From assembly GCF_016433145.1 (NCBI RefSeq), contig NC_058130.1, positions 777,971,002 to 778,035,001 on the forward strand: 64,000 nucleotides of DNA. Direction: 5' to 3'. A program made the translations under genes and the position numbers. The first letter of the stretch is position 1; every line of letters begins with the position of its first letter. The stretch comes from Gracilinanus agilis (Eukaryota). Positions 4,430 to 25,330 of the stretch are shown here, piece after piece. A model generated the notes under the pieces. The model searched no databases and was not told the origin of the DNA. It saw only the letters and a list, made by a program, of their open reading frames with translations.

Positions 4430-4825
4430 CAACTTGGAGGAAGGGGGGACTAGGAGGGAGGGAAACTTTTGGCAAGAGAGAAGAGACATGAATAATTGGA
4501 GAGTGGTATCTTTGCCCTATTGGTTGTGACAGGGAAGGGCGGGGGAGTGTGGGAGCCTTTGAGCTGGCTGGGAGTGCAAGCTGCTTGAGTTATTGGGGGG
4601 GGGGTGCATCTCCAGCCTAGGAGCTGGCAGCTGTCCATGGTGCTGATCTGGGTTCTGCTGCCCAGCCCAGCCCAGCAGCAGCTTGTCCTTGGCCAAGGAG
4701 GGGTACTTGGAGCTGCAGCCAATGATCCAGGCCAGAGATTACTCGCCTTTCCTCCCCCTGCCTTAGCGCGGCAGCAGAATGGACTGAGGGCGGGGTTTAA
4801 GGGAGGCAGCAGTGGTTTGGCAGCA
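4430..4825 (+). promoter_or_regulatory. Pol II promoter of a + strand gene
   Basis: GC-rich and repeat-free. Inverted CCAAT at 4519-4523, GC box at 4537-4545, CCAAT at 4719-4723, GC box GGGCGG at 4788-4793, TATA-like TTTAAG at 4796-4801. An AP-1 site TGAGTCA lies upstream at 4172-4178. Confidence 0.7.
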
Positions 4826-4893
4826 GCGGCTGAGAGAGCCTCCTGTGGCCCCCCGAATCTGAACCAGCCCCTAACCCAGGAGCCCCTCCCCTG
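4826..4893 (+). other. Putative non-coding first exon (TSS approximate)
   Basis: Starts about 25-30 nt after the TATA-like element and ends at a consensus donor CTG|GTGAGT (4894-4899). It contains no ATG. Confidence 0.65.
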
Positions 4894-5051
4894 GTGAGTC
4901 CCAGCAAAGATGGGCAGACATATGGAGTCGGGGTTGGGGGGGGACAGTTTTTGGTGAATGGAAGGAGGCAAGAGAATATTCATTGCTTCTCCCATCCATC
5001 TCATTTCTAGTTCTAAAAGGTTTGGGGTTGTGGGGATCATTGAGGTGGGGA

Positions 5052-23057: not shown

Positions 23058-23470
23058 TTCTAAAGGAAAATTGTAATGCTCAGCCTCATTCAACTCTGGG
23101 AATTGGACTTTTTTATTCAGTGAAAGACAAAAGTGGTCTGGGGTGGGGACTACACATCACCTGGGCTTTCCCCTTAAAATTCACCGTTTCTATGAACAAG
23201 AGCTTCTGGTTCCTCTCTCTTTCCCTCACTTCCCTCTTTCTATCCCTCCCTCCCACATGCTATAGAAATGTTCCCAGCATGGTTTTCATTTCTATATTGA
23301 AACATGAGTCTTTAAAGGATACTCTGTAGTCAGTGTCTATTGCCCAGGCTTTAACCTGCTTTGTCATCATCTCCTGTCAAATATTTGTATGTATGTGTGT
23401 GTGTATATGAGTATGAGTATACATAGACATATATAATATATGTATATATGTGTACTTTTCCCTCCCTTAG

Positions 23471-23546
23471 AGAAATACTAGTCCTTTGGAGAACTTCTGA
23501 GAAAATCCTACCTAGAACAGCCCTGGATATTTCCTTCTGCTCCATG
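23471..23546 (+). other. Candidate 76-nt cassette exon ending in ATG
   Basis: Acceptor acttttccctcccttag| (AG at 23469-23470) and donor ATG|GTGAGA (GT at 23547). Confidence 0.6.
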
Positions 23547-24260
23547 GTGAGAAAATCCCTCTGTACGGCACTGATGGAGTTAAGGCTTGACTTAGGCATT
23601 GAAGTGTGCACGAGTGCATGCTGGTAATCAGACCGCCGGATGGATGCTGCGAGTTGCGTAGAGCACTGTGCCTGTCTCTGCATGTGGCAAGGATTAGAAA
23701 TGTGCAATGTGGAAATGTCAGTGTGCCGATGCAGCAGCCTCCCAGAGCCGACTGTTGACTAGGACCTAAGACCAAAGAGTAATGTAGAGCTAAATCCCAG
23801 CAGCAAGCCATCCGGCTGTGGGGATGAAGGGGAGGGGCTGCTGGGAGACAGGATCCGTTCGCTCCTTCTGCAACTCCAGCTGCCTGAATACATTTAAGAA
23901 GGGTTAGTGGCCTTGCCTAGTTTTCTTAGAGGCCTGTGCTCATCTCTGAGCTCATGTTATCTTGCTGCCTTTTTGTCCTTGCATGATCACTTGGGCCTCT
24001 AGCAGCCGACAGCAACGTGAGGATAGGCTGGGTTTCCAGATTGCTGATGTACTGTGACCATCCCAGCATGTGCTTTAAAAAGCCATCTTGAAATATAATG
24101 ACAGTGTATTTTCGAGAGTGGGCTGCAGCTAGAAGGGTGTTTGCATTTCATCTCACTCAAAGAAAGAAATCAAAATGGGTAGGAAAAGATGAGGGGGAAA
24201 ATTTCCTACTAACCCATTCTTAATCTCTGCATGCTAGCACAGCATATTCCCAGAACTGCA
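23547..24260 (+). promoter_or_regulatory. Intronic splicing-regulatory block (Rbfox motif cluster, QKI/branch motif)
   Basis: TGCATG at 23615, 23679, 23980 and 24228; TGCACG at 23607; GCATG at 24066; TACTAAC at 24207. The block is repeat-free and retains CpGs. Confidence 0.65.
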
Positions 24261-24414
24261 AACTGATGGTTTCTTACTGACAAGGGACAGCATCTTCTGT
24301 GATTCTTGCTGGCTTTTGTAGAGCGTCAAGTCAGGTCAGGAGCATCACCGGAAATAACCCCTGGGTTTTTGTGTCAGTGTCAAATCTTGGGTTGGAATGC
24401 AGGAGATTTTAATC

Positions 24415-24569: not shown

Positions 24570-25330
24570 ACACACCTAGGAATTGAGAGACTAGGATTTG
24601 AGCCCAGGCAGGCCACCAACTCTCCATGGAATTGTGGTGAAGTGACTCCAAATCTGTTTCCTTACAGAGAAAACAGGGCCCTGGGATGGGGGAGTAGGGA
24701 ATAAGGGGATCAGAGCATCCAATAAAGTTAGAGCTGGAAGGAACCTTCAAGATTGTTGAAGCATTTCCCTCATCCCATATATGAAGAACCAGAGACCCAG
24801 GGAAGAATCCACATCCAGCAATGGAGAATTCATTATGGTTCTGGAGGCAGAGGCCCTAGCTTCAATGCCCAATTCACTCTACCCTAACTCGCTGTGGGAC
24901 CTTAGGCAAGTTCTTTTGGTTTACTACTCTGTAAAGTGAGAGATCAAATGTGATAGACTTTTAAGCCCCCTTTCAGCTCTTCACTTTGTGATCCCCTAAG
25001 GTTAAATGACTAACTCAAGATCACATAGGAAGAAAGCATTGAACCCAGAGCTCCTTCTCTTCCCATTAAAGACTTCTAAGAGAGGCTATGGATAGAGAGC
25101 TATACTTGGAATTAGGAAGACTCAAGTTCAAACTCCACCTCAGACACTTTCCTTAGCTCTGTGACCCTTAATCAAAATAATTCAATATTGGTAGCCCTCA
25201 GTTTTCTCATCTGCAAAATGGGGATCATAATAGCACCCACCTCCCAGGAATTTTGTGAGGATCAAATGAACTAACATATGGAGAGTGTTTTGTGAACCTT
25301 AAAGCATCATACAAATGCCAGGTGTCGTCA
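24570..25330. mobile_element. Cluster of MIR/MIR3 relics in both orientations
   Basis: Several CORE motifs, for example cagttttctcatctgcaaaatggggatcataatagcacc near 25200. Confidence 0.75.

What the first reader, a model, noticed from the sequence alone, without database searches (positions are those of the whole stretch)
23471..24233. Exon ending in ATG followed by a dense Rbfox motif cluster: possible splicing-controlled start codon
Seen in sequence: a strong acceptor (acttttccctcccttag), a 76-nt exon whose last three bases are ATG, and donor GTGAGA. Four TGCATG (23615, 23679, 23980, 24228), one TGCACG (23607) and one more GCATG (24066) follow within about 690 nt of unique, CpG-retaining sequence. 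About 0.15 TGCATG would be expected in 620 nt at equal base frequencies. Established knowledge: UGCAUG downstream of a cassette exon promotes its inclusion through RBFOX1/2/3. Inference: inclusion in neurons, muscle or mesenchyme would supply a start codon, so splicing would switch the N-terminus or the translation of the host gene.
Basis: partly seen in the sequence, partly recalled or inferred. Interest (0 to 1): 0.75.

Follow-up and report, generated by a model that had tools for sequence, protein, structure and literature searches.

The report
Exon-like site beside Rbfox motif cluster

Summary
Observation confirmed. The acceptor tract ends in AG at 23469-23470, the exon-like piece is 23471-23546 and ends in ATG, and the donor GTGAGA is at 23547. 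TGCATG sits on the + strand at 23615, 23679, 23980 and 24228, TGCACG at 23607 and GCATG at 24066.

The statistics are weaker than stated. Local composition predicts 0.67 TGCATG, not 0.15 (P for 4 or more = 0.005). A window-wide scan gives 7/400 shuffles on the + strand and 15/400 on either strand. The splice sites rank in about the top 1%, but about five equally good acceptor/donor pairs per strand lie in this window.

The start-codon idea is poorly supported:
- T at -3 of the ATG.
- ATG precedes 6 of 101 strong donor-like sites.
- No open phase-0 exon in the 40 kb downstream, and no coding exon anywhere in the window.

Three things remain notable. This is the only strong donor-like site with two TGCATG within 250 nt. 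All four motifs are on one strand. A sharp CpG-retaining patch (o/e 0.49) starts exactly at the donor.

The scan noted one other RBFOX exon candidate in this genome (GGNBP2), not followed up.

My odds:
- regulatory DNA patch with incidental signals, 0.40
- real Rbfox-enhanced exon, 0.25 (start-codon switch about 0.06)
- pure chance, 0.25
- long exon or UTR, 0.10

The parts
23454..23470 (+). Acceptor-like pyrimidine tract ending in AG
   Evidence: Read. PWM score 6.3, 56th of 4350 AG sites on the + strand. The nearest upstream AG is about 43 nt away, which leaves room for a branch point (read).
23471..23546 (+). 76-nt exon-like piece. Two frames carry stops, the third is open, and the length is not a multiple of 3.
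   Evidence: It has no CpG. No RNA evidence could be obtained.
23544..23546 (+). ATG as the last triplet, with T at -3 (weak Kozak context)
   Evidence: ATG precedes 6 of 101 donor-like sites scoring 8 or more in the window.
23547..23552 (+). Donor-like GTGAGA
   Evidence: PWM score 8.6, 27th of 3320 GT sites on the + strand.
23604..23620 (+). Proximal module: GUGUG, UGCACG (23607) and UGCAUG (23615), 58-74 nt after the donor
   Evidence: GCACG counts as a primary Rbfox motif (10.1101/840272). GU-rich elements next to bound GCAUG are described in PMC11874969.
23670..23684 (+). CU-rich run followed by UGCAUG (23679), 133 nt after the donor
23980..23985 (+). Distal TGCATG, +434 from the donor
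24066..24070 (+). Distal GCATG, +520 from the donor
24228..24233 (+). Distal TGCATG, +682 from the donor
23547..23870 (.). CpG-retaining patch: 11 CpG, GC 0.54, o/e 0.49. It has the densest CpG in the window and a sharp upstream edge at the donor.
   Evidence: o/e is 0.07 at 23071-23470 and 0.19 at the promoter-like 4500-4900.
23387..23448 (.). TG/TA microsatellite just upstream of the acceptor
   Evidence: It gives a sub-threshold mir-297 match (37 bits against a gathering score of 90), which I read as low complexity.
4767..4893 (+). CCAAT and GC boxes lie upstream.
   Evidence: An ORF from the ATG at 4637 would meet TGA exactly at a 4893|23471 junction.

Best explanation
Most likely the 76-nt piece is not a working start-codon exon. 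It is an acceptor/donor pair of ordinary pseudo-exon strength. It sits at the upstream edge of a discrete, non-repetitive, CpG-retaining patch (23547 to about 23870, fading by about 24350) inside a long non-coding stretch of the agile gracile opossum genome. I read the patch as a DNA-level regulatory element that escapes germline methylation, either an intragenic enhancer or a weak orphan promoter. Its TG/CA/GC-rich composition raises the chance expectation of TGCATG about four-fold, and the motif cluster and the terminal ATG are then coincidences. Shown: the anatomy, the composition and the chance levels. Inferred: the regulatory role of the patch.
For: The CpG o/e of 0.49 at 23547-23870 is the highest of any unique sequence in the window, and it has a sharp edge (0.07 just upstream). 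Constraint on an intronic RNA element does not by itself predict CpG enrichment; hypomethylation does (established knowledge). In the related 'organism A', very small runs (178-390 million letters) from several studies hold up to the same share of words (0.22) as 3,000-million-letter runs. That implies local enrichment such as expression, ChIP or ATAC, and it covers more than a 76-nt exon could hold (at most about 0.08); this is inference. Splice signals are at background level: 5 other + strand pairs are as good, and an equally good - strand pair at 23815-23512 overlaps the site. The local TGCATG expectation is 0.67, and TCCCAG occurs four times too. From I estimate about 4-9 such coincidences per genome of this size. 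There is no coding signal and no RNA structure (z = +0.47).
Against: All four TGCATG are on the + strand and none on the - strand. A DNA-level or compositional cause predicts symmetry, so this split has about a 1 in 16 chance. Of 101 strong donor-like sites on both strands, this is the only one with two TGCATG within 250 nt. The two proximal motifs have the GU-rich and CU-rich flanks reported for bound GCAUG (PMC11874969). The patch fails the classical CpG-island criterion (o/e 0.49, below 0.6). No chromatin or methylation data were available. The run-size argument rests on runs whose library type is unknown.
Confidence: 0.4

Rival explanations
1. It is a real alternative exon whose inclusion is enhanced by Rbfox (with LASR) binding the downstream UGCAUG/UGCACG module. 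Because it is 76 nt long, has stops in two frames and carries a weak terminal AUG, it would act as a 5'UTR or poison exon (an upstream AUG, a premature stop or a frameshift) that lowers output. It would not supply the start codon.
For: Two UGCAUG and one UGCACG lie 61-138 nt after the donor, and three more motifs follow within 690 nt. This is the zone where motifs activate inclusion (10.1101/840272; PMC3967051). The local P is 0.005. It is the only strong donor-like site of 101 with two TGCATG within 250 nt. The strand split is 4:0. The flanks are GU-rich and CU-rich (PMC11874969). Rbfox2 is known to control non-productive 'silent' exons (PMC3967051). Both splice sites rank in about the top 1%.
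Against: There is no RNA evidence and conservation is untested. Pseudo-exon pairs of equal strength are common. The upstream flank is a microsatellite with no sign of constraint. CpG enrichment is not what a methylated intron predicts. Only a minority of intronic UGCAUG are bound in vivo (16-28% of conserved ones, PMC3967051).
Confidence: 0.19
2. One reading: Rbfox-dependent inclusion supplies the initiator ATG, so splicing switches translation or the N-terminus of the host protein.
For: The ATG is the only one in the piece and lies at its very end. The upstream exon-like piece has no long usable ORF, since an ORF from 4637 would stop at the junction. Introns placed directly after the ATG exist in real genes such as the calmodulin genes (from memory, not checked here).
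Against: T at -3. ATG precedes 6/101 strong donor-like sites by chance. No phase-0 open exon with usable sites lies in the 40 kb downstream. No coding exon is found in the window. An upstream ATG with a strong context (4779, ATG GAC TGA) would lie in the 5' exon if transcription starts before it.
Confidence: 0.06
3. Pure coincidence in non-functional DNA. The patch would be a younger or biased-conversion stretch that has not yet lost its CpGs, with chance splice-like sites and motifs.
For: Window-wide TGCATG is at chance. A cluster this dense arises in 15/400 shuffles of the window. The neighbouring hAT element has a similar CpG o/e of 0.47. There is no structure and no family match.
Against: The patch is unique in the window and has no terminal repeats or duplications around it. 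Parts of it are held by runs of three other organisms. Three independent oddities coincide at one point.
Confidence: 0.25
4. The stretch from 23471 onward is one long exon, either an alternative terminal exon with 3'UTR or a lncRNA exon. The Rbfox motifs would then act on mRNA stability or translation rather than on splicing.
For: Related-species runs hold more of the 941-nt stretch than a 76-nt exon allows. AATAAA lies at 24721 on the + strand.
Against: That AATAAA lies inside a SINE-like repeat. The donor at 23547 is strong. No run is on record as RNA.
Confidence: 0.1

Closest known systems
Rbfox-activated cassette exons with downstream (U)GCAUG intronic enhancers
   Same: Motif identity, number, strand and position: UGCAUG and UGCACG within 140 nt of the donor, more motifs distally, and GU-rich and CU-rich flanks as in Rbfox/LASR multipart modules (10.1101/840272, PMC3967051, PMC11874969).
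   Different: Use of the exon, motif conservation, Rbfox binding and tissue specificity are all untested here. The upstream flank is a microsatellite, not the conserved flank typical of regulated exons.
Rbfox2-controlled non-productive (AS-NMD, poison) exons
   Same: A short exon that is not a multiple of 3 and has stops in two frames, followed by UGCAUG (PMC3967051).
   Different: The host gene is unknown, so it cannot be said whether the piece lies in a coding region or a 5'UTR.
Splicing-selected start codons such as protein 4.1R exon 2' with AUG1
   Same: The idea that an alternatively spliced 5' segment decides which AUG is used (from memory; papers on this turned up but were not read).
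   Different: In 4.1R the AUG is followed by a long conserved ORF. Here no ORF continuation is visible and the Kozak context is weak.
Intronic pseudo-exons
   Same: Splice-site scores like those of five or more other pairs per strand in this window, no coding potential, and stops in two frames.
   Different: Ordinary pseudo-exons do not carry a one-stranded Rbfox motif cluster and a CpG patch starting at the donor.
Orphan (intragenic) CpG islands and hypomethylated enhancers
   Same: A discrete patch of a few hundred bases with CpG o/e several-fold above a strongly depleted background.
   Different: It is below the classical thresholds (o/e 0.49), and no chromatin, methylation or transcription-start data are available.

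Membership tests
Rbfox-activated alternative exon | The exon is spliced into RNA (junction reads at both ends) | not testable with these tools
No holder is on record as RNA.
Rbfox-activated alternative exon | (U)GCAUG or GCACG within about 200-250 nt downstream of the donor | tested here: met
   UGCACG at +61, UGCAUG at +69 and +133.
Rbfox-activated alternative exon | Motif density above chance | tested here: inconclusive
   Local P = 0.005. Window-wide 7/400 on the + strand and 15/400 on either strand. I estimate about 4-9 chance cases per genome (inference).
Rbfox-activated alternative exon | Motifs and splice sites conserved across species | not testable with these tools
   No vertebrate genome collection is available. 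ORF handles found no orthologous contigs. Metagenome scans gave nothing or chance hits.
Rbfox-activated alternative exon | Rbfox binding and Rbfox-dependent, tissue-specific inclusion | not testable with these tools
   No CLIP or perturbation data can be reached.
Start-codon-bearing exon | AUG in a favourable context (purine at -3) | tested here: not met
   T at -3. The +4 base would come from the unknown next exon.
Start-codon-bearing exon | ORF continues in phase 0 in a downstream exon | tested here: not met
   No credible phase-0 open exon with acceptor score 4 or more and donor score 6 or more lies in 23600-64000. The next exon could lie beyond the window.
Start-codon-bearing exon | The encoded protein has recognisable relatives | not testable with these tools
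   The host gene was not identified. There is no coding signal in the window.
CpG island or hypomethylated regulatory element | At least 200 nt with GC 0.5 or more and CpG o/e 0.6 or more | tested here: not met
   324 nt, GC 0.54, o/e 0.49. This is far above the window background of about 0.08 but below the threshold.
CpG island or hypomethylated regulatory element | Unmethylated in the germline, with open or marked chromatin | not testable with these tools
   The only hint is indirect: small runs of a relative hold the stretch.

The most novel reading that the evidence does not exclude
A 5' exon whose only coding contribution is the initiator AUG is included only where Rbfox proteins are present. 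Splicing would then act as an on/off switch for translation of an unidentified marsupial gene with very long 5' introns.
Probability: 0.06. Interest if true: 0.6.

Novelty: new member of a known kind. Interest (0 to 1): 0.25.

Why it matters
If the exon is real, it would be one more Rbfox-controlled 5' exon. It would most likely tune output through an upstream AUG or a premature stop, which is a known kind of regulation, found here in a marsupial. If the start-codon version held, it would be a clean case of translation gated by tissue-specific splicing. As it stands the case shows something else. Equal-base-frequency expectations overstate motif clusters in TG/CA-rich, CpG-decaying sequence. 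Splice-site strength alone also does not separate exons from the several pseudo-exons found in every 64 kb.

Tried and rejected

2. Orthologous DNA through ORF handles. The exact look-up of the 99-aa minus-strand ORF was not on record. A word search with the 118-aa ORF found no hits.

3. Host gene identification. The exon-1 ORF had no relatives. An EF-hand check, prompted by calmodulin-type 'ATG|intron' genes, was negative.

4. Structured RNA. Rfam gathering found nothing. The permissive search found only a microsatellite-driven mir-297 hit below threshold. Folding gave z = +0.47.

5. Transposon origin. There is no second copy in the window and there are no terminal repeats.

6. Metagenome scans for conserved cores. 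The first found nothing. The second gave three hits with no flanking similarity, which I take as chance.

7. The large representative-protein search was not used. There was no credible protein to submit.

Full report
**What is there**

- A pyrimidine tract ends in AG at 23469-23470.
- The exon-like piece runs from 23471 to 23546 (76 nt) and ends in ATG (23544-23546).
- GTGAGA follows at 23547.
- TGCATG occurs on the + strand at 23615, 23679, 23980 and 24228.
- TGCACG is at 23607 and a fifth GCATG at 24066.
- Measured from the donor, these sit at +61, +69, +133, +434, +520 and +682.

Earlier notes of this scan name the genome as the agile gracile opossum. The window is strongly CpG-depleted and contains marsupial repeats.

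**Is it more than chance?**

- Dinucleotide-preserving shuffles of 23547-24300 give a mean of 0.67 TGCATG and P(4 or more) = 0.005. For GCATG, 5 were observed against a mean of 1.75, P = 0.026.
- When the window is shuffled in 2-kb blocks, a cluster of 4 or more within 620 nt appears somewhere in 7/400 shuffles on the + strand and 15/400 on either strand.
- Window-wide the motif is at chance (31 found, 32.9 expected).
- TGCATG is only the joint commonest hexamer of the stretch, tied with TCCCAG. The stretch is generally rich in TGC, GCA and CTG words.
- TGCACG becomes TGCATG by a single CpG deamination, which is the commonest vertebrate substitution (established knowledge).

Two points favour a real signal. 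All four copies are on the + strand and none on the - strand. Of 101 donor-like sites scoring 8 or more on both strands, this is the only one with two TGCATG in the next 250 nt.

**The splice signals**

I used approximate splice-site matrices of my own. The acceptor ranks 56th of 4350 AG sites and the donor 27th of 3320 GT sites on the + strand.
- Five other + strand pairs and several - strand pairs within 40-300 nt are at least as good, and none shows coding sense.
- An equally good - strand pair (acceptor at 23815, donor at 23512) overlaps the site itself.

So splice strength here is at the usual pseudo-exon level.

**The start codon**

Several observations argue against it.
- The ATG has T at -3.
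- ATG precedes 6 of 101 strong donor-like sites, so an 'exon ending in ATG' is roughly a 1-in-17 event.
- Downstream, no credible phase-0 open exon with usable splice sites exists in the remaining 40 kb.
- A codon-usage scan highlights only GC-rich non-coding stretches.
- Pfam finds nothing, and the word searches find no relatives.
- The piece has stops in two frames and is not a multiple of 3. If it were included inside a coding region it would act as a poison exon.
- An ORF from the ATG at 4637 would read TGA exactly at a 4893|23471 junction.
- A well-contexted ATG at 4779 opens a two-codon uORF.

**The unexpected feature**

The densest CpG cluster of the whole window starts exactly at the donor.
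- 23547-23870 has 11 CpG, GC 0.54 and o/e 0.49.
- The comparison values are 0.07 at 23071-23470 and 0.19 at the promoter-like 4500-4900.
- The stretch is unique in the window and has no terminal repeats, no Rfam family and no unusual fold.

Constraint on an intronic RNA element freezes sequence but does not enrich CpG. Escape from germline methylation does. That points to a DNA-level element such as an enhancer or a weak orphan promoter.

Run sizes give an indirect hint in the same direction. Several very small runs (178-390 million letters) of a related 'organism A', from different studies, hold up to the same share of sampled words (0.22) as runs ten times larger. That implies local enrichment through expression, ChIP or ATAC. 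It also covers more sequence than a 76-nt exon could account for (at most about 0.08 of the words). The library types are unknown, so this is inference only.

**What could not be done**

- No run is on record as RNA.
- No vertebrate genome collection is on hand.
- ORF handles to fetch orthologous contigs failed.
- Metagenome pattern scans gave nothing or chance hits.
- The host gene remains unidentified.

**Weighing the readings**

This window has one or two CpG-retaining patches per 64 kb. The chance of a same-strand cluster in such composition is 0.005. About five strong pseudo-exon pairs lie on each strand per 64 kb. Combining these, I estimate roughly 4-9 purely coincidental configurations of this kind in a genome of about 3.5 Gb.

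Genuine Rbfox-enhanced exons that have clusters this dense, lack coding sense and sit in CpG-rich flanks should be about as rare or rarer. That is my own estimate and was not computed.

The Rbfox anatomy is nonetheless textbook. Motifs in the first ~200 nt downstream activate inclusion (10.1101/840272; PMC3967051). GCACG is a recognised primary motif (10.1101/840272). Bound GCAUG tends to have GU-rich and CU-rich neighbours (PMC11874969). On the other hand, only a minority of intronic UGCAUG are bound in vivo (PMC3967051).

**Verdict**

My odds are:
- regulatory DNA patch with incidental splice-like signals and motifs, 0.40
- real Rbfox-enhanced exon, 0.25 in all, of which the start-codon switch is 0.06
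- pure coincidence, 0.25
- long exon or UTR, 0.10

If the exon is real, it is a new member of a known kind. A single RNA-seq look at the two junctions would settle it.

Noticed in passing
window:23512-23815 (- strand): A minus-strand exon-like pair (acceptor score 9.0 at 23815, donor 6.9 at 23512) overlaps the finding and contains a 99-aa ORF that stops at the donor. It has no Pfam match and no record in the protein collection. It shows how high the pseudo-exon background is.
   Followed up: partly
window:4500-4900: A promoter-like GC-rich stretch with CCAAT and inverted CCAAT boxes and GC boxes. Its CpG o/e is only 0.19.
   Followed up: partly
window:1-64000: T exceeds A on the + strand almost throughout, including upstream of 4.8 kb. 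The L1-like ORF fragments near 13.3-14.3 kb and 21.6-21.9 kb lie on the - strand. Both fit a + strand transcription unit that starts outside the window, but the two signals are not independent.
   Followed up: partly
window:23385-23448: The TG/TA microsatellite just before the acceptor gives a sub-threshold mir-297 match (37 bits against a gathering score of 90). I take it for low complexity. A UG-rich run about 65-85 nt upstream of the acceptor could bind UG-repeat proteins if the exon were real.
   Followed up: partly
window:23498-23508 and 23548-23558: An exact 11-nt direct repeat (TGAGAAAATCC), once inside the exon-like piece and once starting at the second base of the donor. A repeat of this length is expected by chance in 1.7 kb.
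   Followed up: no
window:22859-23065: The hAT element noted earlier has a CpG o/e of 0.47, similar to the patch at 23547-23870. A 400-nt CpG-poor gap separates the two.
   Followed up: partly
window:23277: One GCATG lies 194 nt upstream of the acceptor. If the exon were real, that position would be linked with repression rather than activation.
   Followed up: no
They were left out of all later searches.
   Followed up: no
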